A DNA stretch of 64,000 bases, taken from sequence record LC597490.1. One strand, 5' to 3'. A program made the translations under genes and the position numbers. Position 1 is the first letter of the stretch. Every line of letters begins with the position of its first letter. The notes under the pieces are model-generated. The model was given only the letters and a program-made list of their open reading frames with translations. It was not told where the DNA came from and made no database searches. Shown piece by piece: positions 2,403 through 38,989 of the stretch.

Positions 2403-2705
2403 ATGAGTAAAAGAACAACAGATATTAAATTTCCTATTACTCATAAAGAGATAGGAAATGGCACAGTTGTATTTTATGCTTCTACTTATAGGAAAGATTG
2501 GGCAGGAAGCAATGAGCATCATCCAATTCCTAAATATCCAGAAAATGACCACTTATTAGAAGAAGGTATTATGGGCGCAAATAGGCAAAACAATTATCGA
2601 ACAGATAGTTGGAGGTTGAAAAAAATACAATGTAAATTAGTTGATTTAAACAATGAAATGAGTATTATGAAGTTTAAACAAGAAGGTGTTATCTATGAGG
2701 TTTAA
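2403..2705 (+). CDS. Hypothetical protein with C-terminal tag
   Basis: Ends N-EMSIMK-FKQE-GVIYEV. Confidence 0.7.
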   Translation: MSKRTTDIKFPITHKEIGNGTVVFYASTYRKDWAGSNEHHPIPKYPENDHLLEEGIMGANRQNNYRTDSWRLKKIQCKLVDLNNEMSIMKFKQEGVIYEV

Positions 2706-2973
2706 AGTAGGTGATGTCGTTGAAATTGTTGAAGGTAGTTTCTTTTACCAACAACAATTTTCATCTGGCGGTAAAAAGTTGAAAGGTATCATCGTAGATG
2801 TAAGCGGTCAAGGTGATTGGTACAATTCACATTATGATTATAGAGTACAATGGTGGATGGGGAATAGAAATCAAGGTAAATTCTTCTATAATGATATTCA
2901 TCTACAATTGGTTAATCAACATAATGAAAGTACACTTCTTTCTATGAAGAAGGAGGAAACATATGAGTTTTAA
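2695..2973 (+). CDS. Array A paralog 1 (SH3/KOW-like), C-tagged
   Basis: FKVGDVVEIVEGS..YDYRVQW..YNDIHL; ends N-ESTLLS-MKKE. Confidence 0.7.
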   Translation: MRFKVGDVVEIVEGSFFYQQQFSSGGKKLKGIIVDVSGQGDWYNSHYDYRVQWWMGNRNQGKFFYNDIHLQLVNQHNESTLLSMKKEETYEF

Positions 2974-3247
2974 TATAGGTGACAAAGTAGAAATTCGTAA
3001 AGGTAGTCAATATTTTGGTCAACAAATGCGTGGTATGAAGAAAATGGAAGGCATTGTTACAGATGTTTCAGGCCTAAATGAATGGGTAAGTACTAGCTTT
3101 AAATATAAAGTAAGTTGGATGTTAAACAATAAAGAAATGACTGCATATCTTTATAATGATAAAGATTTAAAACCACTCATTATTAGCAATCAAAAAGTAT
3201 TATCTAGTTTAAAACGAGACAATACCGATGATTGGAGTGTTATATGA
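2963..3247 (+). CDS. Array A paralog 2, C-tagged
   Basis: FNIGDKVEIRKGS..FKYKVSW..YNDKDL; ends N-QKVLSS-LKRD. Confidence 0.7.
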   Translation: MSFNIGDKVEIRKGSQYFGQQMRGMKKMEGIVTDVSGLNEWVSTSFKYKVSWMLNNKEMTAYLYNDKDLKPLIISNQKVLSSLKRDNTDDWSVI

Positions 3248-3531
3248 TGTTGCTTCCACTTGGTACAAAAGTAATTATCCGAGAAGGAACTCAGTTTAAA
3301 GGTCAAGATTCTTACTTTAAACATGGTTATAATGGCTCTAAAGAACAAGGTTATGGCATCATAAATCACTATATTAACATTGAAGATTTTTGTTATAGTG
3401 TTCTTTGGTATAAACAAAATGGTGAGAGATATGGCTCCAATAATTATCGTAGAAGAGATTTACAAGCTATCATTGGAAACAATGAAGAAGCGAAACTTCA
3501 ACTTAAAGTAGATGATGATATTCTAATTTAA
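3244..3531 (+). CDS. Array A paralog 3, C-tagged
   Basis: LPLGTKVIIREGT..YSVLW..YRRRDL; ends N-EEAKLQ-LKVD. Confidence 0.7.
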   Translation: MMLLPLGTKVIIREGTQFKGQDSYFKHGYNGSKEQGYGIINHYINIEDFCYSVLWYKQNGERYGSNNYRRRDLQAIIGNNEEAKLQLKVDDDILI

Positions 3532-3548
3532 GTGTAGGAGGAATTGAA

Positions 3549-3836
3549 ATGAGTAATGAATTGCTCCCAGTAGGTGCGAAAGTAACCTTATTACCTACAT
3601 CTGATTTTGCAGGTCAAGATTATTACAGAGAACATGGTGAAAGGGTTAAGGCACCATTCGGTATTATTGTTCAACAAGTTGGTCGTCGTAATGGCTTTGC
3701 TTACCACATTGATTGGTATACAAAAGATGGTAGGAAGTTTTATTCTGATGCTTATACTAGGCATTGTGTAAAAGCAGTTGTTGTTAACAATGATGATACA
3801 CTCTTATTATTTAAAAGTGATGAAATTAATATATAG
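3549..3836 (+). CDS. Array A paralog 4, C-tagged
   Basis: LPVGAKVTLLPTS..YHIDW; ends N-DDTLLL-FKSD. Confidence 0.7.
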   Translation: MSNELLPVGAKVTLLPTSDFAGQDYYREHGERVKAPFGIIVQQVGRRNGFAYHIDWYTKDGRKFYSDAYTRHCVKAVVVNNDDTLLLFKSDEINI

Positions 3837-7634: not shown

Positions 7635-8123
7635 ATGATTAGATTTTATATTTTCAACCATACAACTGTTAGAAGGAAGACAGAAGCGTTCTTTCAGGAA
7701 CATGGATTAAAATATGAGGTAAAATCGACAAGGGAAATATCATTCAACTTGTTTTGTGATATGTTAAGTAAAGCTGTTGATGGAGTAGGAGATATTATTA
7801 ATCTTAAATCTCCAATTTTTCAAAAGCACAATGTTAACCCAGAAGAACTAACGTTAAGTCAGTTATATGCTTTTGGAATGCAACACATTGATATCTTTAA
7901 GAAGCCAATCATCTTTAATGGTGAATTAACTTATGGTGGTATCACTGAGAATTCATTAAACAGTTTTTTACCAAGCAAATCACGTAGACAAACACTCAAT
8001 CGAATCCTGACTCACATTCGCAAGATTGAAGACAAGAGAGAGGAGGAGAGAATAAGAGAAGAGCTGAAACAACTAGAATTGAAACGACAACGAAGAAAGA
8101 AAGCGAGTGTGTCTGCAAAATGA
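7635..8123 (+). CDS. Spx/MgsR (ArsC-like) family regulator lacking CXXC
   Basis: DGVGDIINLKSPIFQKHNVNPEELTLSQLY, KPII and FLP..R align with Bacillus Spx; CTSC is replaced by HTTV. Confidence 0.75.
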   Translation: MIRFYIFNHTTVRRKTEAFFQEHGLKYEVKSTREISFNLFCDMLSKAVDGVGDIINLKSPIFQKHNVNPEELTLSQLYAFGMQHIDIFKKPIIFNGELTYGGITENSLNSFLPSKSRRQTLNRILTHIRKIEDKREEERIREELKQLELKRQRRKKASVSAK

Positions 8124-10221: not shown

Positions 10222-11697
10222 ATGGAAGTGGCAAAATTAGTAGGTATCGCTCGTGTTTTAAAAGGTGCTCGTTTTAAATGGTCTGGGGAGGATTTTGAAG
10301 TAGTAGTAGCAGGTTCAAACCCAGTCGTTAAAACAAATCTTCATGGTGAGGATGTAGAAGTTGGCAATCTTTCTACTTTTATTACAGAAGATGTTGCTGA
10401 TGTAAAAGTAATTGTTGGTGACGCATTCGTTAAGCCTGAAGCACCTTCACACGAATCAACTATCAAGGAAAAATTAAAAGCTAAAGCTCGTTCGAAGCAA
10501 TCATCAGTTTCAATTGATGCATCTGGTATTCATATCAATGCTAGTGCAATCTCAACGCCTGTTACTGCTAAACAGCAATTACGTACTGACACCAAAGTAG
10601 GTAAGCTTGCATCAGAAGTTGGCAAGATTAAATTAGGTTCTGGTTTAGTAAAAGGTCGCTTAGATTCAATTGAAAATGCAGCTTATGATGCAAAATCAAT
10701 TGCTGAAGAGTCTCAACGTACAGCTGGCTTCTCAGCTAAAGTATCTAAGGAAGCATCTCGCATCCAAGATGAAAAACTAGCTGAAGTATCTCGTCGTGTT
10801 GGAAAATTAGAAGTTAAAAATGAACTTACAAAAACTAAGGAGGAAAATTCAATGAACTTACAACAAAAATTCGCTCAAAAATCTCAAGAGGTAGCTAACC
10901 GTAATAACTTACAGGAGAAATTCGCTGCAAAATCGGCTTCAAAACAAAAAGGTTTCGGTTCAATCGTTAACAACTTCAAAGGTTTATTCGGTAAAGTGGA
11001 AGGTTTATTTGCATTCTCACCACTTACAGGTGGTTTAGCTGTTAAGAAGAAAGATGGCGGTTTAGTAGCTTATAAAGATGGTGGTTTAACTGATGTTTCT
11101 GGTTTATCTTTAGACTTCAATGTACCAGCATTCAAGTTACCAGTAGCAGCAAAAGATGTAAAAGCTGGAGACGTTGTTCTTCATAACGGTGAAGCAGCTT
11201 ACGTTATCGGAGTTAACGATGACTACTTAGAAACTATCGTACCAGAGAAAGCTTCTAAAGGTTCTGTATTACCTGTTAAGAATATCTTATTCGGTCAATC
11301 ATTCTATGTTGTTGTTAAAACATTAGATTCAGCTGGTAACGGTGGTTTCGACCCAATGTTACTTCTTGCATTAGGTGATGGTAACAAAGACGACTTACTT
11401 CCACTTCTTTTAATGGGTGGAGGTTTAGGCGGTAACGGTCAAGCAGGTGCAATCGACCCAATGACTTTAATGTTACTTCAAGATAAAACTGATGACTTAT
11501 TACCACTTATCTTAATGCAACAAGGTGGTTTAGCAGGTCAAGGTTTTAATCCATTATTCTTCTTACTAGGAGAAGATAAAGGTTCAAAATCTGATTTACT
11601 TCCATTACTTCTTATGCAACAAGGTGGCGGTCTTTTCGGACAAGCAGCACCAGCTCCAGCTGCACCAGCAGTAGAAGTTAAAAAAGATCAAAAGTAA
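10222..11697 (+). CDS. Hypothetical protein with C-terminal (F/I)(D/N)P..LL / DLLPLLLM-QQGG repeats
   Basis: 491 aa (start may be GTG 10228). C-terminal half is paralogous to 11836-12648. In-frame internal ATG 10852 has SD aaggagg. Confidence 0.75.
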   Translation: MEVAKLVGIARVLKGARFKWSGEDFEVVVAGSNPVVKTNLHGEDVEVGNLSTFITEDVADVKVIVGDAFVKPEAPSHESTIKEKLKAKARSKQSSVSIDASGIHINASAISTPVTAKQQLRTDTKVGKLASEVGKIKLGSGLVKGRLDSIENAAYDAKSIAEESQRTAGFSAKVSKEASRIQDEKLAEVSRRVGKLEVKNELTKTKEENSMNLQQKFAQKSQEVANRNNLQEKFAAKSASKQKGFGSIVNNFKGLFGKVEGLFAFSPLTGGLAVKKKDGGLVAYKDGGLTDVSGLSLDFNVPAFKLPVAAKDVKAGDVVLHNGEAAYVIGVNDDYLETIVPEKASKGSVLPVKNILFGQSFYVVVKTLDSAGNGGFDPMLLLALGDGNKDDLLPLLLMGGGLGGNGQAGAIDPMTLMLLQDKTDDLLPLILMQQGGLAGQGFNPLFFLLGEDKGSKSDLLPLLLMQQGGGLFGQAAPAPAAPAVEVKKDQK

Positions 11698-12854: not shown

Positions 12855-12958
12855 TATTATCATAGATTTTAAGGAAAGCCATGTAATGGATGTAAGTTCA
12901 TAGGAACTTTATCATATAAAAAATAAAAAAATTGACAATTGAAAGGGAGTTATTAATT

Positions 12959-13810
12959 ATGCGTAAAGTAGTATATGGTTCAACAACAGTAGACATCGAG
13001 GACAACAACTTAACAGTGGAGGACATTCGTGAAGTAATGTCTGAAACATACCCTGAGTTAGCAAATGCAACACACACTGAGCGTGATGGTGTTATTGAGT
13101 TTAAGGTACAGGCGGGCACGAAAGGTGCTCTTCGTGTTGTTAAGTATGGTTCAACTACAATCGACATCGAAGATGATGCGTTAACTGTTAATGATATCCG
13201 TGAAGTTATGTCGGAAACTTACCCTGAATTGGCGAATGCATCTCATACACAAGAGGGTAACGTTATCGAGTTCAAGGTGCAAGCTGGTACAAAAGGAGCG
13301 CTCCGTATTGTAAAATACGGTTCGACTTCTATTGATATCGAGGACGATGCTTTAACAGTCAACGATATCCGTGAGGTAATGTCTGAGACTTACCCAGAGC
13401 TTGCTAACGCTTCTCATACGCAAGAAGGGAACGTTATTGAGTTTAAAGTCCAAGCAGGTACGAAAGGTGCTCTCCGTGTTGTAAAATACGGAAGCACTTC
13501 TATCGACATTGAGGATGATGCATTGACTGTAAATGACATCAGAGAGGTTATGTCAGAAACATATCCTGAGTTAGCAAACGCTTCTCATACTCAGGAAGGA
13601 AATGTCATCGAATTTAAAGTACAAGCTGGTACAAAGGGTGCTTTACGAGTAGTAAAATATGGTTCTACTACAATTGATATCGAAGACGACGCACTAACTG
13701 TTAACGATATTCGTGAAGTAATGTCAGAAACGTATCCAGAACTAGCAAATGCATCTCATACTCAAGAGGGCAATGTGATCGAATTTAAAGTGCAAGCAGG
13801 AACTAAAGGT
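12959..13810 (+). repeat. Five 171 nt coding repeats
   Basis: Units start at 12959, 13130, 13301, 13472, 13643. Confidence 0.95.
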
Positions 13811-13858
13811 GGTCTTGAGTTCTTCAAAGCTATTGCACCAAAATTAAGAAAGAAGTAA
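12959..13858 (+). CDS. Polyubiquitin-like precursor: five tandem Prok_Ub (PRTRC protein C-like) units plus 15 aa tail
   Basis: SD aaagggag, ATG 12959. Each 56 aa unit has YPEL and ends KVQAGTKG, as recalled for PRTRC protein C (YPEI...AVGTKG). Confidence 0.85.
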   Translation: MRKVVYGSTTVDIEDNNLTVEDIREVMSETYPELANATHTERDGVIEFKVQAGTKGALRVVKYGSTTIDIEDDALTVNDIREVMSETYPELANASHTQEGNVIEFKVQAGTKGALRIVKYGSTSIDIEDDALTVNDIREVMSETYPELANASHTQEGNVIEFKVQAGTKGALRVVKYGSTSIDIEDDALTVNDIREVMSETYPELANASHTQEGNVIEFKVQAGTKGALRVVKYGSTTIDIEDDALTVNDIREVMSETYPELANASHTQEGNVIEFKVQAGTKGGLEFFKAIAPKLRKK

Positions 13859-13864
13859 TATGAT

Positions 13865-13898
13865 GGGATGGAGGCCTTGGGCTTTCATCCCTTTTTTT
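13865..13898 (+). terminator. Intrinsic terminator after poly-Ubl gene
   Basis: gggatggaggc-cttgg-gctttcatccc followed by T7. Confidence 0.8.
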
Positions 13899-14333: not shown

Positions 14334-15863
14334 TTGACTAATCTAACAGAATTAAGAAGTCGTGTATCACATGTAGTATCATCTAGAAGATTATTGTCTG
14401 ATGGTTTAATTAAGGACCATATGGCGATTCCAACAAACGTAGCTGAAGAAAAGAAAATTGTTCAAGACACAGTTTTTGAAGCAATTAAAAATACATTTAT
14501 TGGGTGCCGTATTAATCCCAATAAAAATGCATTCTCTGTTAAACTTGATGGTGCGATTAACGTTAAAGCACAAGAGTTATATGATTATATCCAAGAGCAT
14601 CCACATTGGAAATCATTTTTAGAATCTCAACATTCTAGTAAGTTACGTACAATATTAAACTTACAAAATGTGTATCAAGAAAGGAGAGAATTAAAATTTA
14701 AAAGAGAAGATGATGGACGTCGCTTTATTTATGTCCCGTTTGAACCACATGATATTCCGAGTTATCATGACCAAGGTTTATATCATATGCTTCAGTATTT
14801 GAAACAAAGTTTCGACAGAGAGAAAGCAGCATCTGTTATCTTTGATGAAGTAATGCAATTGATTGAAACTGAACGTCAACGTCGTATCGAAGAACGTAAT
14901 CGTTTAATGCAACGTATCGAAGCGAAGTACAAGGAAGATATCAAAGCAAGCTTGTTGAAACCAATTGGTACGATTCGAGGAGATGTTCGTGAGAAACTTA
15001 TCCAAGAACGTATGGTTAAATGGTGTAATGAGCAAGGTTTAGCGCCAGCGATTCCTCAAGAGCTTACATACCAGAACATTATTCCAGTTGGTACGGAAGT
15101 ATCAGTTGTTGTTAAGTCAGGTTCTCAAGAAGAAGGATGGTTTGCAGTTCCACGTTCTGGAGGATTTGAGATTCCTGAAGGCTTTGAACGTTTAATGGTT
15201 TATGATAATGTAACTCGTCACGATGCATTACATCAACGTTCACGTAGTGGTTCAGCTCCAATCGTAATCAATGAAGATACATTCACTGAGTTCGATATCA
15301 ATTACTGGAAGCACTTACTACCTGAAGAACATGCTCAGTATAAAGCAGGTTATGAGGCTGTAGTGGCTTCTGTAACAGCTGCTGAAGTTAAGATAGTACA
15401 AGACTTACTTGATGAGCAAAAACGTGAGGAAGAGGCACGTATTGAGCGTCAAAAGCAAGAGCTTGAACAGAAACGTGAAGAGTTAAGACGTCAACGTGAG
15501 CGTGAAGATGAAGAGTTGCGTCGTCTTGAAGCAACGTATGAAAGAGAAAATGAGCAGAAACGTCAAGAAAGAAAGCGTAGAAGCTTAGACGGTATTACTC
15601 GTCAATTACAAGAACAAGCTGAAACTCATACGGTAGAAGATGATGTATTAGATATCGTTGAATCTGATTACACAATCTTATACAATCCGTTTGGTGTAGA
15701 AAGTAAGTTCACGTTAGTACATGCAAGTGGTGAAGAAGAAAACTTTGCAAGTGAAGATGATTTAAAAGTACGTATCTTTGATGAATTAGATTTAGATGAG
15801 CACGAAGCTGTTGTGTATCATAAAATCAATCAAAGCCGTATCTACAAACAATTAACAAAATAA
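14334..15863 (+). CDS. Hypothetical protein with long charged coiled coil, in Ubl cassette
   Basis: TTG start with SD ggaggg; E/R/Q-rich helix near C-terminus. Confidence 0.75.
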   Translation: MTNLTELRSRVSHVVSSRRLLSDGLIKDHMAIPTNVAEEKKIVQDTVFEAIKNTFIGCRINPNKNAFSVKLDGAINVKAQELYDYIQEHPHWKSFLESQHSSKLRTILNLQNVYQERRELKFKREDDGRRFIYVPFEPHDIPSYHDQGLYHMLQYLKQSFDREKAASVIFDEVMQLIETERQRRIEERNRLMQRIEAKYKEDIKASLLKPIGTIRGDVREKLIQERMVKWCNEQGLAPAIPQELTYQNIIPVGTEVSVVVKSGSQEEGWFAVPRSGGFEIPEGFERLMVYDNVTRHDALHQRSRSGSAPIVINEDTFTEFDINYWKHLLPEEHAQYKAGYEAVVASVTAAEVKIVQDLLDEQKREEEARIERQKQELEQKREELRRQREREDEELRRLEATYERENEQKRQERKRRSLDGITRQLQEQAETHTVEDDVLDIVESDYTILYNPFGVESKFTLVHASGEEENFASEDDLKVRIFDELDLDEHEAVVYHKINQSRIYKQLTK

Positions 15864-15893: not shown

Positions 15894-16619
15894 ATGGCAA
15901 ACCGTCCAGATTCTATTAACATTGAGATTTTACAAGAGGGAGTTACAATCAAGACAACGAAAAATGGTGTAACAACTTTAAAGGAAACAAATCTTGAGCA
16001 GGTTCAACGTCAATTAACAAGCAATGAGCGTATTGAGACGCCGTTGCTTCCAAGTATTTGGGGTGTACAAAAGTTTGTTAAACGTGGTAATAAAGAGTTA
16101 TACGTTATTACGACTCCTCCAGGAATTCGTAAAGTACAGTACACTGGTGATGACCGTGGTGAGTATGAGATTCCTGTACCAGCTGCGATTTGGTTTGTAA
16201 CAGCACAAGAACGTTCTGGTGGCGGACGTCAATTGATTCATACAACAGTTTATGCAATTAAAAATCCTATTTTAACAGGTATTGAACAATTGTATCGTAT
16301 GCCATTTAGTAACTGTGATAACTCGTACATTTGCTGGGGAGATGAGAGTCCACAAATTTCATCACCAAAAAGTGTTCAATCTATCCCAGACCGTTTCTTC
16401 TCTATGCCATTTAACAGTGACTTAGGAAGCAATGCGTATCAACCAATTAAAGAAGTAGTGGATGGAAGAGAAATTAGTCACTTCCGTATCAATCACTTAT
16501 TCCGTTACTTAGATCGTAAATTGAAAGAGGATAAAGATTTCCGTTTCCCGAACAATCATTTAAATAGTTACGAGTCATTTAAGCGTGTACTTGACCACGA
16601 ACTTCGTCGTTTATCTTAA
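15894..16619 (+). CDS. Prokaryotic E2 family D (PRTRC protein B-like)
   Basis: TPPGIRKV..IPVPAAIW..VYAIK..LYRMPFSN...ICWG..RFFSMPFN; candidate catalytic Cys in ICWG. Confidence 0.75.
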   Translation: MANRPDSINIEILQEGVTIKTTKNGVTTLKETNLEQVQRQLTSNERIETPLLPSIWGVQKFVKRGNKELYVITTPPGIRKVQYTGDDRGEYEIPVPAAIWFVTAQERSGGGRQLIHTTVYAIKNPILTGIEQLYRMPFSNCDNSYICWGDESPQISSPKSVQSIPDRFFSMPFNSDLGSNAYQPIKEVVDGREISHFRINHLFRYLDRKLKEDKDFRFPNNHLNSYESFKRVLDHELRRLS

Positions 16620-16678: not shown

Positions 16679-18061
16679 ATGACAAAGGCAGCAGCAAAAG
16701 CAAACGGAATGGCAGCGCTAAGAGCGAAAATGGCAGGACAAACTATGGGATTCCACACTGGTCCTCAAACAGCTGAGGTTTATGCACAAAAACCAACAAA
16801 CATCGTTACAGCAGGTAATGGTGTTTTCCGTGTAATCCAAAAGGATATCGGTGCTTTCATTACGAAACTAGCTGATGGTAAGATTCCAGGTTTACCTGAA
16901 ATGCAAGAAGGAGTGGAATTAGCGATTCCAAAGATTCCTTACAAGTATTGGTTACAAGTATTATCATTCTATAAAGATGTAAATGCAAAAGATGGTACAG
17001 AAGCATCTGTTATCTTCTTCTGGAATACGAATAATGTTCAGATTCCAACTCATTATGACCCAACTCCTGCACAAGCAGCGAAGGGTGAGTTAGGGCCAGA
17101 AGTAAAAGGTTTAACGCAAGATGGTCAATTAATCATTTATTGTCCAGTACAAAAGAACTCTGGTAGTTTATCAGACTTTACGAAAGATTCATTTGTAGAT
17201 TGGTTACGTCTTAATACAGCTCAGTTATTAGAAACACATTCTCATAATACAATGGGTGCGTTCTGGTCAGGAACAGATGACAGCAATGAGAACTATCCAC
17301 AGTTCTACGGTGTTATGGGTAAAGTTTCAAGCCCACAACCTGAGTATCGTTTCCGTTATGCTTTAGGTAAAGAAAAGTTCGATTGTGAGTTATGGGAACT
17401 ATTCGAAAAACCTCAAGTAAAAATGACTGAAACAGTTATTGTTAACATCCCAGGTGTAGGTGAGTACAAAGATGAGCAAGAAGTGAAGAACTTAGACTTC
17501 AATGGTCCATGGCCGATGGTTGAATATCCAGATGATTGGATGGGTCAACATAGTAAGAGTGTATACACACCAACTTACACAACTCCGTACCAACGTAAAA
17601 CATATGGTGCAGCAGGAACTCAAGTTCACGGAGGAGCAGGTGGTGGTAACTTTCCCAGTCTCCACGGTTCAGAAGCCTGGGGAGACGGCTGGGGGGATTC
17701 AGGCTACTGGCCTGGCGTTTCTGGTCAATCTGGCCTTGGCATGGGTGCGGAAGTAATCGAAGGTGACTTCGGATACGGAGAAGGTACCAGGCAAGGGCAA
17801 GAATCGTTCGAAGAATCGTACAAAAAACTCTTACAAGAACCAGTCGCAGGGCAGGGGACGTGGACGTTCGCAAAAGCATGGGAAAAGAAAGTAAGTGAAG
17901 GTCAGCTTGAAACAGATGGAACAACTGTTGATTATGTAATCATGGAACCAACTGAAGCTGAAGAACGTGATGAAATTCATGCATTAATTGGTGAATTAAT
18001 TAACTTTGGTACGTATGCGACCATCGTTGATATTGCAAGAGATGAACACCTCGTAGAGTAG
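16679..18061 (+). CDS. JAB/MPN+ isopeptidase (PRTRC protein A-like) with long low-complexity C-terminal extension
   Basis: GNGVF; EASV (catalytic E); ETHSHNTMGAFWSGTDD (HxH...S..D). Confidence 0.85.
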   Translation: MTKAAAKANGMAALRAKMAGQTMGFHTGPQTAEVYAQKPTNIVTAGNGVFRVIQKDIGAFITKLADGKIPGLPEMQEGVELAIPKIPYKYWLQVLSFYKDVNAKDGTEASVIFFWNTNNVQIPTHYDPTPAQAAKGELGPEVKGLTQDGQLIIYCPVQKNSGSLSDFTKDSFVDWLRLNTAQLLETHSHNTMGAFWSGTDDSNENYPQFYGVMGKVSSPQPEYRFRYALGKEKFDCELWELFEKPQVKMTETVIVNIPGVGEYKDEQEVKNLDFNGPWPMVEYPDDWMGQHSKSVYTPTYTTPYQRKTYGAAGTQVHGGAGGGNFPSLHGSEAWGDGWGDSGYWPGVSGQSGLGMGAEVIEGDFGYGEGTRQGQESFEESYKKLLQEPVAGQGTWTFAKAWEKKVSEGQLETDGTTVDYVIMEPTEAEERDEIHALIGELINFGTYATIVDIARDEHLVE

Positions 18062-18130: not shown

Positions 18131-18988
18131 ATGAAACTTGAAAAAACTTATTCTTTAGATACTATGTACAAAATTGCTAAACACTTTATCGTAATTGGTG
18201 CTGGTGGTAATGGTGGTTACTTTATTCCACAATTAGCTCGTATGGTTTCTGTTCAAAACAAAATTCGTGAAGTACAACGTTTACCGTTACATCGTATTAC
18301 AATCATTGAAGCTGATGGCGTAGAAGCAAAGAACTTAACTCGTCAAAACTTTATCTCATCTGATATTGATAAGAATAAAGGTGAAGTAATGGCAGCTCGT
18401 TATGCTCGTGCATTTGGTCTTGAAATTGGATTAGTAGCTCAGTATCTTGATAGTCCAGATATGTTAGCTAAGATTATGCGTGAAAGCAAATCAAAAGAAA
18501 CACCAGTTATTTGCGGAATGGTAGATAACAATAAAACTCGTAAGTTAATGCATGATGCATTTAAATCATATGATGGTGCATTTTATCTTGATGCAGGTAA
18601 TGAAGAGTTTGCAGGACAATGTGTTCTAGGTTATAACCATCGTAAAGATCGTTTTGTTTTACCAAGAGAAGGTGGAGATTCGATTCAAAGCTTTAGCTTA
18701 CCAAGTGTTTGTGAGATGTTCCCAGAGGTAATGGAAGCGAAAGATAAGTTGCCAACTGAAATGTCTTGTGCGGAACGTTCTGAATCAGCTCCTCAGAATA
18801 TTTATACAAACATGACAGCAGCAAATGAAGCATTAGGATTTATTAATCATTTATTAACTAGTAATGCAACTGGTACAACACCAACTGGATTACGTGTTCA
18901 TGCAACAATCTTTGATTCTCGTACAATGAATAAAACAACTCGTTTTAATCGTACAAGTGAACTTGAAAAATATGCAGCGGGGAAATAA
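18131..18988 (+). CDS. E1/ThiF-family Ubl-activating enzyme (PRTRC ThiF-like)
   Basis: IGAGGNGG, DGVEAKNLTRQNF, NKGEV, MVDNNKTR, YLDAGNEEFAGQ, SCAE (catalytic Cys), QNIYTN. Confidence 0.9.
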   Translation: MKLEKTYSLDTMYKIAKHFIVIGAGGNGGYFIPQLARMVSVQNKIREVQRLPLHRITIIEADGVEAKNLTRQNFISSDIDKNKGEVMAARYARAFGLEIGLVAQYLDSPDMLAKIMRESKSKETPVICGMVDNNKTRKLMHDAFKSYDGAFYLDAGNEEFAGQCVLGYNHRKDRFVLPREGGDSIQSFSLPSVCEMFPEVMEAKDKLPTEMSCAERSESAPQNIYTNMTAANEALGFINHLLTSNATGTTPTGLRVHATIFDSRTMNKTTRFNRTSELEKYAAGK

Positions 18989-19016: not shown

Positions 19017-19490
19017 ATGAATTATACATTCTTCTGGGGTGGTATATTCTCTCAATGGCATAAATCTAAATTTGAAGTTGATGGTATTACATTTAATTGT
19101 GCTGAACAATACATGATGTACCAAAAAGCATTATTATTTGGAGATGAAGAAGTTGCTAAGAAAATATTAACGAAGTCTAATCCAAGAGATCAAAAGGATT
19201 TAGGTAGAAAAGTAAAAGGATTTGTAGAAGAAACCTGGAATAAACATGCGAAAGAAATTGTTTATAAAGGTAACTATGCAAAGTTCACTCAAAATCCTGA
19301 ACTATTAAAAGGATTAAAGGCTACAGGTCAAACATTATTAGTAGAAGCAAGTCCTCATGATGACATCTGGGGTATTGGGTTAGATGAAAAAACAGCTCGT
19401 AAAACACCAGAAAAAGATTGGAAAGGAACAAATTGGTTAGGCGAAGTACTAACTAATTTACGATTTAATTTAATCGAGGAAGGCAAATAG
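19017..19490 (+). CDS. NADAR (YbiA-like) family protein
   Basis: FSQW, AEQYMMYQKA, AKFTQN, LVEASPHDDIWGIG, GTNWLG. Confidence 0.9.
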   Translation: MNYTFFWGGIFSQWHKSKFEVDGITFNCAEQYMMYQKALLFGDEEVAKKILTKSNPRDQKDLGRKVKGFVEETWNKHAKEIVYKGNYAKFTQNPELLKGLKATGQTLLVEASPHDDIWGIGLDEKTARKTPEKDWKGTNWLGEVLTNLRFNLIEEGK

Positions 19491-25400: not shown

Positions 25401-25769
25401 ATGAAAGATAGAATGAGCAGTTCTAATATTACGAAAGAAGCACTTTTTGCAGTTGAAATATCAGAAGGAAAAGAAGTTCCAACTTTGTATTTAGAATTAG
25501 AACATGCTTATTATCCATACATTACATATACACATCGACCTAAATGTACTATAAGTCTTCCACATCCTATTCACCCTAGAGCTGTGAAATGGTGTGATAA
25601 GTATAATATTCCATATGAACCGCATTGGGATAAAGACCTAGCTGCATTAGGTTATGGACAGAGTAATTACTGCACAATAAACATGATTACTAAAGCAATG
25701 TTTGAAAAAGTTGTTCCTCGTAAAAATGAGTATACGTTTCACAAGTTAAGAGAGGAGGAAGGCATTTAA
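25401..25769 (+). CDS. Array B paralog, C-tagged
   Basis: PIHPRAVKWC..PHW; ends N-EYTFHK-LREE. Confidence 0.7.
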   Translation: MKDRMSSSNITKEALFAVEISEGKEVPTLYLELEHAYYPYITYTHRPKCTISLPHPIHPRAVKWCDKYNIPYEPHWDKDLAALGYGQSNYCTINMITKAMFEKVVPRKNEYTFHKLREEEGI

Positions 25770-26083
25770 TGGATAATAAAGATATTCTGTATTATGTTCT
25801 TCCTAATAAAGGACCTTTTTCTTATCGTAAATATGAAGTAAAGTTACAACGACGTAGAGGATTAGAGGATGTAGGCATACCACCAGAAGTTGCTACATGG
25901 GCAGAATCACGAGGCGTAACAGATATACGTCCTCATTGGAATCCAGATAGAAACTTACAAGGTTGGCGTTGTACAACTCAATTAGATATGCATCGAATTG
26001 ATAAGTTTACGTATAACAAGTTTTGCAATAAAACGAATGAACAAGCCTTAGTTTTATTTAAGAAAGAAACCGATATTACGTAA
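25769..26083 (+). CDS. Array B paralog, C-tagged
   Basis: GIPPEVATWAE..PHW..QGWRC; ends N-EQALVL-FKKE. Confidence 0.7.
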   Translation: MDNKDILYYVLPNKGPFSYRKYEVKLQRRRGLEDVGIPPEVATWAESRGVTDIRPHWNPDRNLQGWRCTTQLDMHRIDKFTYNKFCNKTNEQALVLFKKETDIT

Positions 26084-26095
26084 GGAGTTGATAAT

Positions 26096-26401
26096 GTGAA
26101 TGTAGGAGCATCCATATATTCTTATTATGAGAATGCTTGGGGCGTACCAACTTATCGAAAATATACAGTAGTCTACACTGAATTTAAGTATGAACATGGT
26201 ATTCCACCTCACCTTGTTGATTGGCTAGAAGAAAACAAAGTTCCTTATGGTCCTCATTGGTCAATTCGTTCAGATGCTCAAGGGTGGAGAGCCTCTCCCT
26301 TTATTAGAATTGACCAAGTTACAAAAGAAGAATATGAACGGTACAAAAATAACACAAATAAGATATCCGTTTCATTCTTTAAACAAGAAGAATTATATTA
26401 G
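26096..26401 (+). CDS. Array B paralog, C-tagged
   Basis: GIPPHLVDWLE..PHW..QGWRA; ends N-KISVSF-FKQE. Confidence 0.7.
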   Translation: MNVGASIYSYYENAWGVPTYRKYTVVYTEFKYEHGIPPHLVDWLEENKVPYGPHWSIRSDAQGWRASPFIRIDQVTKEEYERYKNNTNKISVSFFKQEELY

Positions 26402-26415
26402 CAAGGAGTGATTGT

Positions 26416-26715
26416 ATGCAATTAGTAACAAAGCTACGTCCAGATGAACCAAATGATAGTGAGTATCGTGTATATACATACACAGCATCGGGTACTCATA
26501 AACTAGGTATTCCTGCTCATGTTGGTGCATGGTGCATATCAAATGGCATACGTATATCAAGTCATTGGCACGCATATGATGAATGGGAAGGTTGGGTGTG
26601 TACGCACAACTTGCTTGTCGATTTCATCACAAAAGAAGAGTATGATGAATTAACACGTAAAGGAAACAACGAAGGTGCAGTAACAGATTTAAAAACAGAA
26701 GTTTTATTTGATTAA
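26416..26715 (+). CDS. Array B paralog, C-tagged
   Basis: GIPAHVGAWC..SHW..EGWVC; ends N-EGAVTD-LKTE. Confidence 0.7.
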   Translation: MQLVTKLRPDEPNDSEYRVYTYTASGTHKLGIPAHVGAWCISNGIRISSHWHAYDEWEGWVCTHNLLVDFITKEEYDELTRKGNNEGAVTDLKTEVLFD

Positions 26716-26727
26716 AGGAGGGTCGTT

Positions 26728-27036
26728 ATGCCAACTCCAGAGTATAAAAGTGTATATGCTGAAATTTCTATTAATGGAACACAACAATACACTGAGTACA
26801 GAATATTTAAGGAGAGAAAAAGTACGGGTGGATTCCCACCTGAAATGGTTCCTATATTTGAAAAGATGGGAGTTGAAATTCTAGATCACTGGGATATAGA
26901 TTGGCATAATAAAGGGTGGCGTTCTAGTGATTACGTAACACCAGGTGAAATTAGTTATTCACATTATTTAAAAAAACGAGAAAAGCAAAACAACCATCAA
27001 GCATCTTTATTTATGAACGAAGAACCTGCTATTTAA
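26728..27036 (+). CDS. Array B paralog, C-tagged
   Basis: GFPPEM..DHW..KGWRS; ends N-HQASLF-MNEE. Confidence 0.7.
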   Translation: MPTPEYKSVYAEISINGTQQYTEYRIFKERKSTGGFPPEMVPIFEKMGVEILDHWDIDWHNKGWRSSDYVTPGEISYSHYLKKREKQNNHQASLFMNEEPAI

Positions 27037-27048
27037 AGGAGGTGTAAT

Positions 27049-27360
27049 ATGAATCACATTGGAGAAACGAATTATGCAAGAATTGTAGGCAAGGGAGGTA
27101 ACGTTCGTTATTGTAAGTATGTTATACTTGCAAAGCCAAGGGAAATTCGAAGTGGGTTTCCGCCAGAGATAGCTAGGTGGGCTGAATCCAAAGGCGTCGA
27201 GCTTACTCCTCACTGGACAGCATCACATAGAGAAGAAGGATGGATGGCTAGTCTCTATATTCATGTTGATCGTATTCGAAAGGATGAATATTTAAAAGCT
27301 GAAAGAATGCAAAATAACGAGGCAGTTTTCAAATTTAAAAGTGAAACTGAAGTATGGTAA
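27049..27360 (+). CDS. Array B paralog, C-tagged
   Basis: GFPPEIARWAE..PHW..EGWMA; ends N-NEAVFK-FKSE. Confidence 0.7.
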   Translation: MNHIGETNYARIVGKGGNVRYCKYVILAKPREIRSGFPPEIARWAESKGVELTPHWTASHREEGWMASLYIHVDRIRKDEYLKAERMQNNEAVFKFKSETEVW

Positions 27361-28523: not shown

Positions 28524-29813
28524 GTGAAGCAGGATTTATCCTTAGCGCTAGAGACGATTAATGTCTTAGCGGAAGACCCTATAACAGCGCAATTAGAATC
28601 ACAATTTTGTCATCTACACTTACACACACCATGGAGTATGCTCGATGGTTTTTGCGTAATTGATGACTTAATTAAGTTAGCGAAAGAAAGAGGTATGACT
28701 CACATTGGTATTAGTGACCACGGTAACTGTCATGGTCACATAGAATTCTATACCAAATGTAAGGCGGCAGGTATTACACCTGTATTAGGTTGTGAATTAT
28801 ATGAAGCTCCTCAAATGAAATGGAAAAAAGAAGAGTTCGATAAGATGTCTCCAAATTGGAACGGATGGCGTCCAACTATCAACCACCTACTTGTTATCGC
28901 TAAAAACAACGAAGGTTATGCGAATCTATTAGAACTATCTAGTAGGGGTTATCTAGAAGGTTTCTATCGTAAGCCTCGTGTTGACTACAATTTATTAAAA
29001 CGTTTAAGCAAAGGTTTGATCGCAACTAGTGCATGTCTTGGTGGTTCGATTCCTCAATGTATTTTACGAGGGAAAGAACGAGTAGGTAGAAACATTGCAA
29101 AATTTTATAAGAAGATTTTCGATGAGTTCTACTTCGAAATACAACCAAGTGAATTGCCAGATCAAAAGATTGTAAATGAAAAACTGATTCAATGGTCAAA
29201 AGAAATGGATATACCCCTTGTCGTTACGTCGGATGCACACATGCTTCGTAAAGAAGATAAGCCAGTCCATGCTAGTTTAACTACAATTGGACGTAATGAA
29301 GATACATCTGATATCAGTGTATATGACCATGCTTATTTCATGAGTGTAAGAGAAATGCAAGACTATGGTATTCCACAAGAAGCAATCGACAATGCACAAA
29401 AGATTGCTGAAAAATGTAATGTTATAATTGAAATGGGTAATTTACAATTCCCTGAATATGAAGTACCTGAAGGATTCGATTTCGATTCATACTTGGTTCA
29501 TTTATGTGAACAAGCATTCTTCAATATGGCATTAGAAAAAGATATTGATGTTGATTTATACTTACAACGTATGAATTATGAATTAGATGTAATCAAACAA
29601 AAGAAACTTTCAGCTTATATGATTATTGTTTGGGACTTTATTGATTACGCAAAGAGAAATAATATATTAGTAGGTCCAGGTCGTGGTTCGGCAGCTGGTT
29701 CATTGGTTGCTTACTTACTACGTATTACCAACTTAGACCCTATTAAATATGATTTACTGTTTGAACGATTCTTAAATCCTGAACGTAATGCAATGCCTGA
29801 CGTAGATACTGAT
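28524..29813 (+). CDS. dnaE: DNA polymerase III alpha, exon 1 (PHP domain to PDVDTD)
   Basis: HLHLHTPWSMLDG, SDHG, VGPGRGSAAGSLVAY, FERFLNPER.MPDVDTD. Confidence 0.95.
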
Positions 29814-30501
29814 ATGGAAATGTCCCGCCTACTAGTAATAGTAGTGTCGGAACTCTGTGGATTGCTGGAAGCAGCGTAAGCTATTATAACTAAAACGTGA
29901 CTTGAATAAGGTGAGCGTGAATGTTTAAAAATATAATAGTAGTGTTGTAATCAGCAGCCTAGCTTCGTCCGTTATGATAAGGAAGCGCTCTAAGTAGACA
30001 ATATCATACGTTGTATCCCGTGCGATATGTAATCCCGTAATTCTACATTATGTAGTTGGTCTTCCCTCCACTGCGAGCCGTCCCTGTGCGTGAACAGACC
30101 CAGTACTTTGATTAATAGAAGAAGGTTCAACGACTATCGAAAGCGTAGCTTCTATGTGAATAGGAGTGAGTAAGCGAGTAGAGTAGGGTATGTCAGAATA
30201 AAGTAGAATGGAGTCGGTCCCTATCAAGCAATTTATTGTTTCGGGAGGACGAAAAATAGCGCCCGTAAAAGCTATTTGGTCTCTTGGTCTTAAATGATAT
30301 ATTCGAAGTGCAGAGCGCCCGAATGATCTCTTTTATGCAGAATAAAGCTTGTTGAGGCTCAAATGTGTAAGAAAGAAGCAAGGGTAATGATATAGTCTAG
30401 TCCCGATTGTCTGAGTCAAACTACAAATTGATGAATAGCAGTAAGAGTGAGACCTAACAGCTACAGACATGAGAAATTTGGTGAAAGCCAGGGTGTAAAC
30501 G
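29814..30501 (+). mobile_element. Group I intron 1 in dnaE (688 nt, no ORF)
   Basis: Exon ends in U, intron ends in G. IGS gtcgg 29846-50 pairs with ctgat. P attgctggaa, Q aatcagcagc, R gttcaacgacta, S aatgatatagtc. Splicing restores PDVDTD-FDYERR. Confidence 0.9.
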
Positions 30502-31513
30502 TTTGACTACGAAAGAAGGCATGAAGTAATTGATTATGTAACACGTAAATATGGAGCAGATAAAGTATCTCAGATTGGTACATTCGGTACGTTATCAACT
30601 CGTATGGCGTTAAAAGATATTGGTCGTGGATTAGGTATTGACCATAACATCATCAATGAAATGAATAAAATGATTCCTGTACATCAAGGTAAAGTTGCTT
30701 CTATTAAAGATGCATTAGAGCAAGTACCTGAATTACAAGAATATCAAACTATGTATCCTGAGCTATTTGAATTAGCTATGAAGGTAGAAAGCTTACCTCG
30801 TACTAACTCAATTCATGCTTGTGGAATGGTTATTGCGCCGAAGTCATTATATGGTTCCATCCCATTAATTAAAGGAAAAAATGATGAAGTCGTAACGCAA
30901 TATGAAGGCCCGACATTAGAAAAACTAGGTATTATCAAGTTTGACTTCCTTGGCTTAAAGAACTTATCTGTAATTGATATTGCACGTAGGTTAGCAAAGG
31001 AACGTCATGGCGTTGATATTGACCCAGATAAATTAGAACCAGAAGACCCAAAAGTATTTAATACAATCCAGCAAGGATTCACTGACGGATTATTCCAGAT
31101 TGAGTCTGAAGGTATGAAGAAGTTGTTCCGTGGTATTAACAAGGTAGACTTCGAGACATTAATAGCTGGTGTAGCTTTATACCGTCCAGGTCCGATGGAA
31201 CATATTCCTGATTATCAGGCCAAATCAAATGGATTAAAAGAAGTGTCTTATCCTCACGCAGACCTAGAACGTATCACAAAGAACACGTTCGGTATTGCCA
31301 TCTACCAAGAACAAATCATGCAGATTACAGGACAGTTCGGTGGATATTCTCCAGGTCAACAAGATGGATTTAGAAAGGCTATTGGTAAAAAGAGCCAGGA
31401 GGTTATGGATAAGGTATTACCTGAATTACATTCAGACATTCTTGACCACAACTACTCACAAGAGATTGCAGAATACATTATCAACATCATTAAACCATTC
31501 GTTGGTTATGGGT
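30502..31513 (+). CDS. dnaE: DNA polymerase III alpha, exon 2
   Basis: FDYERRHEVIDYV..QIGTFGT, HACG, KFDFLGLKNL, LFQIES, LYRPGP, YQEQIM, FVGYG. Confidence 0.95.
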
Positions 31514-31847
31514 TAACATGTTAGGCCCCTCTAGTGAGTGATTACTAGAGCAAACTCCGAATATGCTGGGACGAACCTTAGAGCCTTTAGTACGAGCATA
31601 CGCCGTAACAATCTAAAGGATTGGTCAATCAGCAGGGATAGCCGAAAGGAAGCCCCCAGAGACTACCAAGGAGCATCTTTATCTTTCTATAATGGAGAGT
31701 TTGATCCTACTGGCTTAGGTGTTTTCACACCTCCTTGTCAATTGGTCAGATTAGCGGTTAGCTTTCGAGCTTTCCGTTATGGAAAGATGGAGATGATGGT
31801 ATAGTCCACTCCCCTAATAAATATCGGGAAATCCGAGGGTATAAAGG
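31514..31847 (+). mobile_element. Group I intron 2 in dnaE (334 nt, no ORF)
   Basis: gggU/ pairs with gccc in P1. P aatatgctggga, Q aatcagcagg, R cagagacta, S atggtatagtcc; terminal G. Splicing restores GYG-F-NRSH. Confidence 0.9.
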
Positions 31848-32722
31848 TCAACCGTTCACATGCTGCTTGCTATGCATATATTTGTTATCAAACTGCATAT
31901 TTTAAGACACACTACCCAATTGAATTTATGTGTGGATTATTAACTATTTTTGGTGAACAACAAGAGAAATGTGTTCAGTACATTGAAGAGTCTAAGCGTA
32001 TGGGCATTAACGTTCTACCTCCTGACATTAACTTCAGTGAGCGTGGATTCTCTATTGATGGCAAAGCTCTACGTTATGGTTTAGCAAGCATAAAAGGAAT
32101 GGGAGAGGCTGTAGTAGATGCAATTCTAGCGGCACGACCATTTGCTTCATTAGAAGATATGATTCAGAAAGTACCAAAACGTATCATGAACAAACGTGTT
32201 ATTAATGTTCTATGTCGTTCTGGAGCTTTAGATGGATTAGGAAATGAACATAAGAACCGATTGGCTATTCTTCAATATCTATACATGCTTCGTGGAGATA
32301 AGGATGATATTTCATATGAAGTATCTAAGTATGATAAGCAAGCTATGCTACAAGATGAAAAGCAATTGATTGGTGTATATGTAAGTTCACATCCATTAGA
32401 AGGTATATGTGAGAAATTAAACTGGGATTACATTGCCGATGGTGATGTTTTTGAAAGCGCTGGTATTATCAGAAGCTTTAAAGAAGTTCGAACGAAACGT
32501 GGTCAGTTAATGGCAATGGTTAATCTCGAAACATTAGATGGTGAGAAGAAGATAGTTGTCTTCCCAGATGTATATGAGAAACTTGATGTTCCATTGCAAG
32601 AAGGACTTATTGTTAAGTTTGCTGCTTACTTCAAGTTTAACTTCCAATACAATGAACGTTCTTGTTTAGCCAAGAAGTTTACGATTCCGAAACGGATTAA
32701 TTCACAGATACTCAAGAAATAA
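31848..32722 (+). CDS. dnaE: DNA polymerase III alpha, exon 3 (spliced product 1058 aa)
   Basis: NRSHAACY, YFKTHYPIEF, LPPDINFS, YGLASIKGMG, C-terminal OB fold; exon lengths 1290+1012+875 = 3177 nt, in frame. Confidence 0.95.
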
Positions 32723-37959: not shown

Positions 37960-38286
37960 ATGAGAAGAGCAATGATTGAATACAAAGGGGAAATAATAGA
38001 ACCCATTGCAATTGTATTTAGAAGAGGCATTACAAGAGAAGATAGGCATATCGCATTGGTTCATACACCAGGAGAATACTTTTGTCCTGTTACAATAGAA
38101 GCTATGTTTAGGTATGATAAAAAACAACCACATGTTTTATATGAATCTCCAAGATATATGAAAATATTATCACAGGATTTAGATGAAAATTATAGTTGGG
38201 TTCGTATCAACAAAGAAGATATCATAACAAGTAATGAATCTAATCAGAATGCTTCTTTATACATGAGAAAAGAGGAGGCACTATAA
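37960..38286 (+). CDS. Array D paralog 1, C-tagged
   Basis: EPIAIVFRR..IALVH; ends N-QNASLY-MRKE. Confidence 0.7.
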   Translation: MRRAMIEYKGEIIEPIAIVFRRGITREDRHIALVHTPGEYFCPVTIEAMFRYDKKQPHVLYESPRYMKILSQDLDENYSWVRINKEDIITSNESNQNASLYMRKEEAL

Positions 38287-38663
38287 TGAAGAAAGCATTT
38301 GCTCTAATTCCAGGTTTACTTCCAGAAGAAGAATTATTTGACGATGTAAATTGTGCATATGAAGACTACAACAATCCAATCACTGTAGAAGTATTTGCTA
38401 TTGTCTCTCGTGATGATGAAAGATTGATTGCATTACATAGACATGAAGAAGCAGATTACTGGCCCATGAGCCTTGAACAACTTGCAGCCACAGATAGTGA
38501 AGGTATGGTTGAAATCTTTATATCTAGTCATTTTCATCAAATTAGTGAACCAGACTTTAAAGAAAACTATGTATGGTCTACGATTGTACATGATAATTAC
38601 AAAATAAGAGATGCATCGAATCAAGACAATTTAGCTAGTATGAAAGGGGAGATTATGATATGA
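38286..38663 (+). CDS. Array D paralog 2, C-tagged
   Basis: VEVFAIVSR..IALH; ends N-QDNLAS-MKGE. Confidence 0.7.
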   Translation: MKKAFALIPGLLPEEELFDDVNCAYEDYNNPITVEVFAIVSRDDERLIALHRHEEADYWPMSLEQLAATDSEGMVEIFISSHFHQISEPDFKENYVWSTIVHDNYKIRDASNQDNLASMKGEIMI

Positions 38664-38989
38664 GAAAAGCCTATGCAACAATAGAAAAACGGGGAAGAGA
38701 CCCTAAGGAAGTGGAAATAGTTGCGCTTATGATACGTAGAGATGGAAGAACAATCGCATTGTATCATGAAGCAAACACAGCTTTTCATCCCAAAAGCGTA
38801 GAAGCTATACAAGAAAAGGATACGCCTAACTATAAAATGCTTTTTCTTTCAGAAAAGTATTACCAAATTACTAAAGAGGATTTACGTGTTCATTATAGGT
38901 GGGATGATGTCTTGAATGAGAATTATAGAATTGAAGCGAACACGAATCGGGATGCTTCTAAGTCACTGAAAGGAGAAGAAGTCATATGA
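38660..38989 (+). CDS. Array D paralog 3, C-tagged
   Basis: VEIVALMIR..IALYH; ends N-RDASKS-LKGE. Confidence 0.7.
   Translation: MRKAYATIEKRGRDPKEVEIVALMIRRDGRTIALYHEANTAFHPKSVEAIQEKDTPNYKMLFLSEKYYQITKEDLRVHYRWDDVLNENYRIEANTNRDASKSLKGEEVI

What the first reader, a model, noticed from the sequence alone, without database searches (positions are those of the whole stretch)
12959..13858. Phage-encoded polyubiquitin-like gene: five head-to-tail Ubl units plus a capping tail
Seen: five 56 aa units ending ...FKVQAGTKG joined by a single Ala. Units 2 and 5 are identical, unit 4 differs by 1 aa, unit 3 by 2 aa and unit 1 by 12 aa. A 15 aa tail (GLEFFKAIAPKLRKK) blocks the last C-terminus, and a terminator follows. 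Established: PRTRC protein C / Prok_Ub as I recall it is a single unit ending in TKG, whereas eukaryotic polyubiquitin genes are tandem identical units with a capping extension released by isopeptidases. Inference: convergent polyubiquitin-style dosage amplification, matured by the linked JAB to five conjugatable monomers per translation event.
Basis: partly seen in the sequence, partly recalled or inferred. Interest (0 to 1): 0.9.

Follow-up and report, generated by a model that had tools for sequence, protein, structure and literature searches.

The report
Phage polyubiquitin-like precursor gene
A giant Bacillus phage encodes five near-identical ubiquitin-like units in one capped protein, next to its own E1, E2 and JAB protease genes; this mirrors eukaryotic polyubiquitin genes, and I found no paper describing it for this family.

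Summary
ORF 12959-13858 (+) encodes five 56/57-aa units that each end in AGTKG, then a 15-aa tail, then a hairpin terminator.

The units belong to the Prok_Ub / PRTRC_C family. The gene heads a six-gene cassette: polyUbl, a small acidic protein, a fast-evolving ~500-aa protein, a Prok-E2_D-type E2, a JAB protease with an intact JAMM motif, and a ThiF-type E1. The window is the last 64 kb of Bacillus cereus jumbo phage vB_BceM_WH1.

The same cassette occurs in other jumbo phages and in the B. thuringiensis israelensis plasmid-prophage pBtic235, with 1 to 7 units.

Three results favour release of equivalent monomers:
- In all 61 multi-unit relatives, every unit of a protein keeps the same four-residue end, although 12 different ends exist across proteins.
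- Units 2-5 are 95-100% identical in protein, yet their synonymous sites are scrambled.
- Caps vary from none to 21 residues.

Cleavage by the JAB and the conjugation targets are inferred, not shown. I found no paper describing this. I rate it a new variant of a known kind (the Iyer/Aravind type 6d, PRTRC-like Ubl cassette).

The parts
12959..13858 (+). polyUbl ORF (299 aa; WH1 gp211): five Prok_Ub-like units plus tail
12959..13126 (+). unit 1 (56 aa, ends AGTKG), 12 differences from unit 2
   Evidence: Pfam Prok_Ub 21.3 bits alone
13127..13297 (+). Ala linker + unit 2
   Evidence: Pfam Prok_Ub 24.1 bits alone; AF2 model pLDDT 85
13298..13468 (+). Ala linker + unit 3
13469..13639 (+). Ala linker + unit 4
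13640..13810 (+). Ala linker + unit 5 (identical in protein to unit 2)
13811..13855 (+). 15-aa C-terminal tail (cap); amphipathic motif shared with some relatives; low model confidence
13865..13898 (+). intrinsic-terminator-like hairpin and T-run; a hairpin with T-run sits at the same position in L002, L003, L004, L008
13936..14319 (+). small acidic protein (127 aa), conserved in position (88-163 aa in relatives), no family
14334..15863 (+). fast-evolving 509-aa protein, conserved in position (394-610 aa in relatives), no family or solved relative
15894..16619 (+). E2-like protein (241 aa); invariant Cys147 and upstream PFxN
   Evidence: alignment A2; BLASTP E 2e-24 to the L018 orthologue, which scores 55 bits on Prok-E2_D
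16679..18061 (+). JAB/JAMM protease (460 aa) with N-terminal domain and Gly-rich C-terminal extension; E108, H187xH189, S197xxD200 invariant
18131..18988 (+). ThiF-type E1 (285 aa); Gly-rich ATP loop, RQ, DNN and Cys213 invariant

Best explanation
The gene encodes a polyprotein precursor of a small ubiquitin-like modifier. It is transcribed at a higher level than the downstream enzyme genes because a terminator follows it. The linked JAB metalloprotease is proposed to cut after the Gly of each xTKG end, removing the tail and separating the units, which gives five near-identical ~6 kDa monomers with a free C-terminal Gly. The ThiF-type E1 would adenylate that Gly, pass it to its conserved Cys and then to the Cys of the E2, which would attach it to Lys residues of phage or host proteins during lytic growth. 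Shown: the repeat anatomy, the family assignments, intact catalytic motifs, conservation of the cassette, and lytic-cycle induction of the pBtic235 orthologue. Inferred: cleavage at internal junctions, conjugation, and the targets.
For: Family and fold:
- Pfam Prok_Ub scores 94.5 bits and NCBIfam PRTRC_C 73.6 bits, above its 45.95 cut-off.
- The AF2 models give beta-beta-alpha-alpha-beta-beta units joined by low-confidence linkers, with pTM 0.27, meaning no packing between units.

Enzymes:
- The JAMM motif, the E2 Cys, and the E1 ATP loop and Cys are invariant across orthologues.

Cassette in relatives:
- The same six-gene order occurs in nine further loci, with 1, 2, 3, 4, 5, 6 or 7 units.

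Evidence that every unit is used:
- In 61 of 61 multi-unit relatives every unit of a protein has the same four-residue end, while 12 different ends exist across proteins.
- The residue after an internal end is small or variable (A, S, M, L, N, T). After the last end there is nothing (10 cases), one residue, or up to 21 residues.
- Units 2-5 are 95-100% identical in protein but share only 40% of codons at identical residues, against 50% +/- 3% expected for random synonymous choice.

Expression:
- A hairpin with T-run follows the gene in five lineages.
- In published RNA-seq of pBtic235 the polyUbl rises by log2 5.3 on induction and the rest of the cassette by 4.0-4.9 (PMC9700832 supplement).

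Precedent:
- The bacterial JAB peptidase BilC cuts a linear Ubl-GFP fusion exactly after the conserved Gly (bioRxiv 10.1101/2023.09.26.559546).
Against: - There is no biochemical evidence for this family.
- One unit alone scores 24.1 bits on Prok_Ub, just under the 25-bit cut-off.
- Foldseek matches of one unit to ubiquitin, SUMO and BilA have TM 0.55-0.66 but E-values above 0.1.
- E1, E2 and JAB all score below the curated PRTRC cut-offs.
- Known multi-domain bacterial Ubls (BubA, BilA) are not cut into domains (PMC11601596).
- A subclade ends its units in QNKS, without a C-terminal Gly.
- The tail shows a recurring amphipathic motif, so it may do more than cap the protein.
Confidence: 0.6

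Rival explanations
1. The array is one multi-domain modifier. Only the tail is removed, and the whole five-domain chain is attached through the last Gly. That would amount to a genetically pre-assembled linear chain, comparable to ISG15, BilA or BubA with their 2-3 beta-grasp domains.
For: BubA has up to three beta-grasp domains, and only the last is used for conjugation (PMC11601596). The most common layout among relatives is two units (31 of 69), as in ISG15-like proteins. Foldseek on the five-unit model lists tandem di-ubiquitin-like domains and a Bub multi-ubiquitin-domain protein, though weakly.
Against: Internal units keep exactly the same end motif as the last unit in 61 of 61 proteins, and that motif co-varies across proteins. 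Units are near-identical rather than specialised. Unit number ranges from 1 to 7 within an otherwise constant cassette. The model shows no contacts between units.
Confidence: 0.22
2. The protein is an unprocessed virion component, a string of small domains used as a structural or decoration protein, and the neighbouring E1/E2/JAB genes act on something else.
For: The GenBank record of WH1 names it 'virion structural protein', along with gp208 three genes upstream, in an otherwise non-structural region. The beads-on-a-string model resembles POTRA-like arrays in Foldseek.
Against: I could not find the basis for that annotation. The gene is always the first gene of the E1/E2/JAB cassette. The units are Prok_Ub homologues with conserved C-terminal Gly ends. 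Presence in virions is equally expected if the Ubl is conjugated to virion proteins.
Confidence: 0.08
3. The units are sulfur carriers of the ThiS/MoaD type, or a multi-core precursor of a ribosomal peptide product processed by a ThiF-like adenylyltransferase, and are not protein modifiers.
For: The E1 is ThiF-like. There are weak MoaD and SAMP1 hits on the units. ThiF-like enzymes also act in peptide natural-product pathways (PMC12250964, listed).
Against: An E2 with a conserved Cys and a JAB protease are always present, and neither has a role in sulfur transfer. No sulfurtransferase or cofactor genes lie nearby. Each unit is a folded 56-aa domain, not a short core peptide.
Confidence: 0.04

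Closest known systems
Operon type 6d of Iyer, Burroughs and Aravind 2006 (PMC1779556), largely the TIGRFAM 'PRTRC' cassette
   Same: It has a small Ubl ending in Gly (Prok_Ub / PRTRC_C), a JAB with an extra N-terminal domain, a ThiF-like E1, an E2 of the Prok-E2_D type and a fast-evolving extra protein. The 2006 paper already lists B. cereus and B. thuringiensis among carriers.
   Different: Here the Ubl is a capped array of five units rather than a single unit. The enzymes fall below the curated PRTRC cut-offs. No ParB-like partner or PRTRC D/E/F proteins were found. The carrier is a lytic jumbo phage, or a jumbo plasmid-prophage in relatives.
Eukaryotic polyubiquitin genes (such as yeast UBI4 and human UBB/UBC; from my own knowledge)
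   Same: Both have head-to-tail units that are identical or nearly identical in protein, synonymous differences between units, one or a few capping residues after the last Gly (often Asn, as in 13 relatives here), and variable unit number.
   Different: They share only the beta-grasp fold, not close homology. The units here are 56 aa and end in TKG rather than RGG. A one-residue spacer lies between units. The predicted processing enzyme is a JAMM metalloprotease encoded in the same cassette. Processing is not demonstrated.
Bil (BilABCD) antiphage ubiquitination-like systems
   Same: Both have Ubl, E2, JAB and E1 in one operon. The JAB peptidase BilC trims residues after the conserved Gly and cuts linear fusions.
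   Different: Bil is a host defence system that tags a phage tail protein, whereas this cassette is phage-encoded. BilA is a single modifier with one or two different domains. The E1 and E2 belong to different families.
Bub (type 6e) operons with 'polyUbl' BubA
   Same: Both have several beta-grasp domains in one polypeptide, which the 2006 paper noted as reminiscent of poly-ubiquitin.
   Different: BubA domains differ from one another, the N-terminal ones form filaments, and only the last carries the reactive Gly. Here all units are equivalent and all keep the reactive end.

Membership tests
Pfam Prok_Ub (PF14454) | HMM score above the gathering threshold of 25 bits | tested here: met
   The whole protein scores 94.5 bits over 4 stretches. 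Single units score 24.1 and 21.3 bits, just under the threshold. The single-unit relative in L019 scores 49.7 bits over the full profile and matches the window protein by tblastn.
Pfam Prok_Ub (PF14454) | beta-grasp fold | tested here: inconclusive
   The single-unit AF2 model has pLDDT 85 and topology b-b-a-a-b-b. The best PDB matches include ubiquitin, SUMO, UBL domains, BilA and protein G B1, with TM 0.5-0.66 but E above 0.1.
Pfam Prok_Ub (PF14454) | C-terminal Gly available for adenylation | tested here: met
   Every unit ends in TKG. The Gly would be exposed only after cleavage, which is not shown.
PRTRC system (TIGR03734-03742) | PRTRC_C above the curated cut-off | tested here: met
   73.6 bits against a cut-off of 45.95, summed over the repeated units.
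PRTRC system (TIGR03734-03742) | PRTRC ThiF, protein A (JAB) and protein B (E2) above the curated cut-offs | tested here: not met
   ThiF scores 102.7 against 144.75. Protein A scores 33.3 against 101.8. The window E2 gives no hit, and the L004 orthologue scores 37.1 against 131.45.
PRTRC system (TIGR03734-03742) | ParB-related partner and proteins D, E and F | tested here: not met
   The neighbouring proteins give no such hits, and none is annotated in 64 kb of WH1.
Iyer 2006 operon type 6d | Ubl + JAB with N-terminal domain + E1 + E2 + further fast-evolving protein in one gene neighbourhood | tested here: met
Polyubiquitin-type precursor (architecture, not homology) | head-to-tail near-identical units plus a C-terminal cap | tested here: met
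Polyubiquitin-type precursor (architecture, not homology) | cleavage into monomers by a dedicated peptidase | not testable with these tools
   There is only indirect support: the end motif is identical in all units of each protein, and BilC provides a precedent.
Multi-domain single modifier (ISG15 / BilA / BubA type) | domains differ and only the last carries the reactive end | tested here: not met
   Units are 95-100% identical, and all units keep the same end in 61 of 61 relatives.

The most novel reading that the evidence does not exclude
Jumbo phages of Bacillus run their own complete ubiquitination-like pathway. Its tag is mass-produced from a polyubiquitin-style precursor, and the tag ends up covalently attached to the phage's own virion proteins. 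This would make it a viral self-tagging system that converged on the eukaryotic polyubiquitin gene design.
Probability: 0.25. Interest if true: 0.9.

Novelty: new variant of a known kind. Interest (0 to 1): 0.72.

Why it matters
Polyubiquitin genes are regarded as a eukaryotic way to make large amounts of a modifier from one message. Finding the same design in phages would show that it evolved more than once: identical units, a cap, and a linked processing protease, together with a private E1 and E2.

It would also add a virus-encoded arm to prokaryotic ubiquitin-like conjugation, which so far is known from host defence systems (CBASS, Bil, Bub).

The codon pattern is a clear natural case of a repeat held constant in protein while its DNA is kept dissimilar. 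One carrier, pBtic235, lives in a widely used biopesticide strain and already has public transcriptomes, so descriptive follow-up is easy.

Tried and rejected
- Literature searches for the phage name, PRTRC, Prok_Ub, phage polyubiquitin and jumbo-phage Ubl found nothing on this gene. Two papers were not held.
- A word-based search with one unit found nothing. Sequence search against solved structures was empty for the polyUbl, the 509-aa protein and gp208.
- Foldseek with the five-unit model mainly returned POTRA arrays with rmsd above 20 A and was uninformative.
- The search for related loci with broad alignments failed or found nothing. A narrower alignment worked.
- Di-unit and single-unit relatives looked up directly lay on contigs of about 1 kb with no context.
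- I asked whether the 'virion structural protein' label was copied from an annotated homologue. gp208 has no such homologue in the phage collection, and the BpSp virion proteome paper does not mention a related protein.
- The sigma-70-like match at 12932-12960 overlaps the start codon, so I rejected it as this gene's promoter.
- The sulfur-carrier and peptide-product readings were rejected because an E2 and a JAB are always present.

Full report
**What is there**

The window matches the last 64 kb of Bacillus cereus jumbo phage vB_BceM_WH1 (229.8 kb). Gene coordinates coincide with that record after an offset of 165,829. Phage Edson is an 85% relative.

ORF 12959-13858 on the + strand is WH1 gp211. 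It translates to 299 aa: a 56-aa unit, four more units each preceded by one Ala, and a 15-aa tail. Tandem Repeats Finder sees period 171 with 76% nucleotide matches. A strong hairpin with a T-run follows at 13865-13891.

**What the units are**

- The whole protein scores 94.5 bits on Pfam Prok_Ub and 73.6 bits on NCBIfam PRTRC_C, whose cut-off is 45.95.
- One unit alone scores 24.1 bits, just below the Pfam threshold.
- A single-unit relative in a viral contig (L019) scores 49.7 bits over the full profile, which links the clade to the family.
- AlphaFold2 gives each unit a beta-beta-alpha-alpha-beta-beta topology with pLDDT around 85. The last six or seven residues and the linkers are flexible, and there is no packing between units.
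- Foldseek places one unit among ubiquitin, SUMO, UBL domains, the bacterial Ubl BilA and protein G B1, with TM 0.5-0.66 but non-significant E-values. The fold is therefore compatible with beta-grasp but not independently proven.

**The neighbourhood**

Five genes follow on the same strand:
- a 127-aa acidic protein;
- a 509-aa protein with no detectable family;
- a 241-aa E2-like protein;
- a 460-aa JAB protein;
- a 285-aa ThiF-type E1.

Alignments with orthologues show the catalytic residues are invariant. The JAB has the full JAMM signature: Glu108, His187-x-His189, Ser197-x-x-Asp200. The E2 has Cys147 with an upstream PFxN. The E1 has the Gly-rich ATP loop, RQ, DNN and Cys213.

The window E2 has no direct Pfam hit. 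It aligns at E 2e-24 with an orthologue that scores 55 bits on Prok-E2_D.

All three enzymes hit the PRTRC models only below their curated cut-offs, and no ParB-like or PRTRC D/E/F proteins are present. This is a diverged relative of the type 6d / PRTRC cassette, not a member by the curated criteria.

**Relatives**

A full-length search found 15 clusters, all multi-unit. A phmmer search with one unit against 1.84 billion representatives found 62. Counting units with an HMM over 69 usable proteins gave the following:

| Units per protein | Proteins |
|---|---|
| 1 | 8 |
| 2 | 31 |
| 3 | 13 |
| 4 | 7 |
| 5 | 8 |
| 6 | 1 |
| 7 | 1 |

Single units are under-counted, because one unit alone barely reaches the E-value limit.

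Wherever enough flanking DNA exists, the gene order is the same: Ubl array, small protein, mid-size fast-evolving protein, E2, JAB, E1.
- Contigs of 180-264 kb carry 3, 5, 6 or 7 units.
- A 244-kb IMG/VR contig carries 2 units, and its JAB scores above the Pfam cut-off.
- An 86-kb viral contig carries one unit with a 60-aa C-terminal extension.
- The 235-kb plasmid-prophage pBtic235 of B. thuringiensis israelensis carries 4 units.

**Evidence on processing**

1. In all 61 multi-unit proteins, every unit of a protein carries the same four-residue end, while 12 different ends occur across proteins. Internal ends therefore evolve under the same constraint as the last one. This is expected if each is read by the same protease and E1, and it is unlike ISG15- or BubA-type multi-domain modifiers.
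2. The residue after an internal end is A, S, M, L, N or T. After the last end there is nothing in 10 proteins, a single residue (Asn in 13), or a tail of up to 21 residues.
3. Units 2-5 are 95-100% identical in protein, yet only 40% of codons at identical residues agree. Random synonymous choice with this phage's codon usage predicts 50% +/- 3% (1 of 1000 simulations as low). With the gene's own usage the expectation is 47.5%. The longest in-register exact nucleotide run between two units is 17. Every relative examined shows the same pattern.
4. Window and Edson units are one-to-one orthologues: nucleotide identity is 0.85-0.92 on the diagonal against 0.75-0.82 off it. Against the more distant L003, all unit pairs among units 2-5 are 75-78% identical in protein, so units evolve in concert at the protein level over longer times.
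5. By contrast, tandem paralogue arrays elsewhere in the window have drifted to 24-39% identity.
6. A hairpin with T-run follows the gene in five lineages despite sequence divergence. This fits higher expression of the tag than of the enzymes.
7. Published RNA-seq shows the pBtic235 cassette is switched on with the lytic cycle. The polyUbl gene has the largest change, log2 5.3.
8. A bacterial JAB peptidase, BilC, cuts a linear Ubl fusion exactly after the conserved Gly, so the proposed chemistry has a precedent.

**Most likely mechanism**

One translation event yields five modifier units. The JAB removes the tail and separates the units after each Gly. The E1 adenylates the Gly and passes it through its own Cys to the E2 Cys, and the E2 transfers it to target lysines.

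I put this at 0.6. The main rival, at 0.22, is attachment of the whole array through the last Gly after removal of the tail only.

The targets are unknown. The WH1 record labels this protein and gp208 as virion structural proteins, in a region otherwise full of replication and nucleotide-metabolism genes. It gives the same label to some but not all genes of the structural module. That pattern suggests virion proteomics, but I could not find the source. If the label is real, the tag or the array travels with the virion.

**Comparison and novelty**

The cassette type was predicted in 2006 (type 6d, listed for B. cereus and B. thuringiensis). Tandem Ubl domains were noted then for type 6e. Type 6e is now known as Bub, whose domains are not separated.

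I found no description of Prok_Ub arrays, of their caps, or of a phage-encoded pathway of this kind. I therefore rate it a new variant of a known kind.

**Unexplained points**

- Protein-level concerted evolution occurs together with DNA-level scrambling.
- A subclade has units that end in QNKS rather than Gly.
- An amphipathic motif recurs in the tails of several relatives.
- The roles of the small acidic protein and the ~500-aa protein are unknown.

Noticed in passing
window 28524-32722: DNA polymerase III alpha is annotated as three separate ORFs with gaps of 0.4-0.7 kb. In relative L006 the same gene carries Hint/intein and LAGLIDADG signatures. It is probably an interrupted gene.
   Followed up: no
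L003 13818-16803; L004 13696-15387: The JAB gene of the cassette is interrupted in relatives. In L003, HNH and LAGLIDADG endonuclease ORFs lie between its two halves. In L004/L005 a 300-nt gap splits the JAB domain itself.
   Followed up: partly
window 25401-27360, 37960-40556, 2695-3836: There are three arrays of consecutive ~100-aa paralogous ORFs (6, 8 and 4 genes) at 24-39% protein identity and of unknown function.
   Followed up: partly
window 19017-19490: A NADAR-family gene lies directly after the E1 (TIGR02464, 165 bits; weak hit to an anti-phage NADAR model).
   Followed up: no
window 7635-8123: An ArsC/Spx-like gene lies a few kb upstream of the cassette here and also in L003, L006, L008, L011 and pBtic235. 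This may be a conserved linkage.
   Followed up: no
window 10222-11697: The 491-aa gp208 is also labelled 'virion structural protein' in WH1. It has no family, and its only homologues are in Edson and, weakly, phage G. It is conserved upstream of the cassette only in close relatives.
   Followed up: partly
window 13127-13810: Codon identity between units is lower than random synonymous choice predicts (0.40 against 0.50). This hints at selection against DNA-level repeats.
   Followed up: yes
P0053, P0057: In a subclade of arrays every unit ends in QNKS instead of a Gly.
   Followed up: no
P0032: A 472-aa database protein that matched in 8 stretches is an out-of-frame translation of a related repeat array, not a real 8-unit protein.
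   Followed up: yes
L008 15715-16407; L011 16392-17129; L022 12871-13557: An RVT_3 (RNase H-like) gene follows the E1 in several relatives but not in the window.
   Followed up: no
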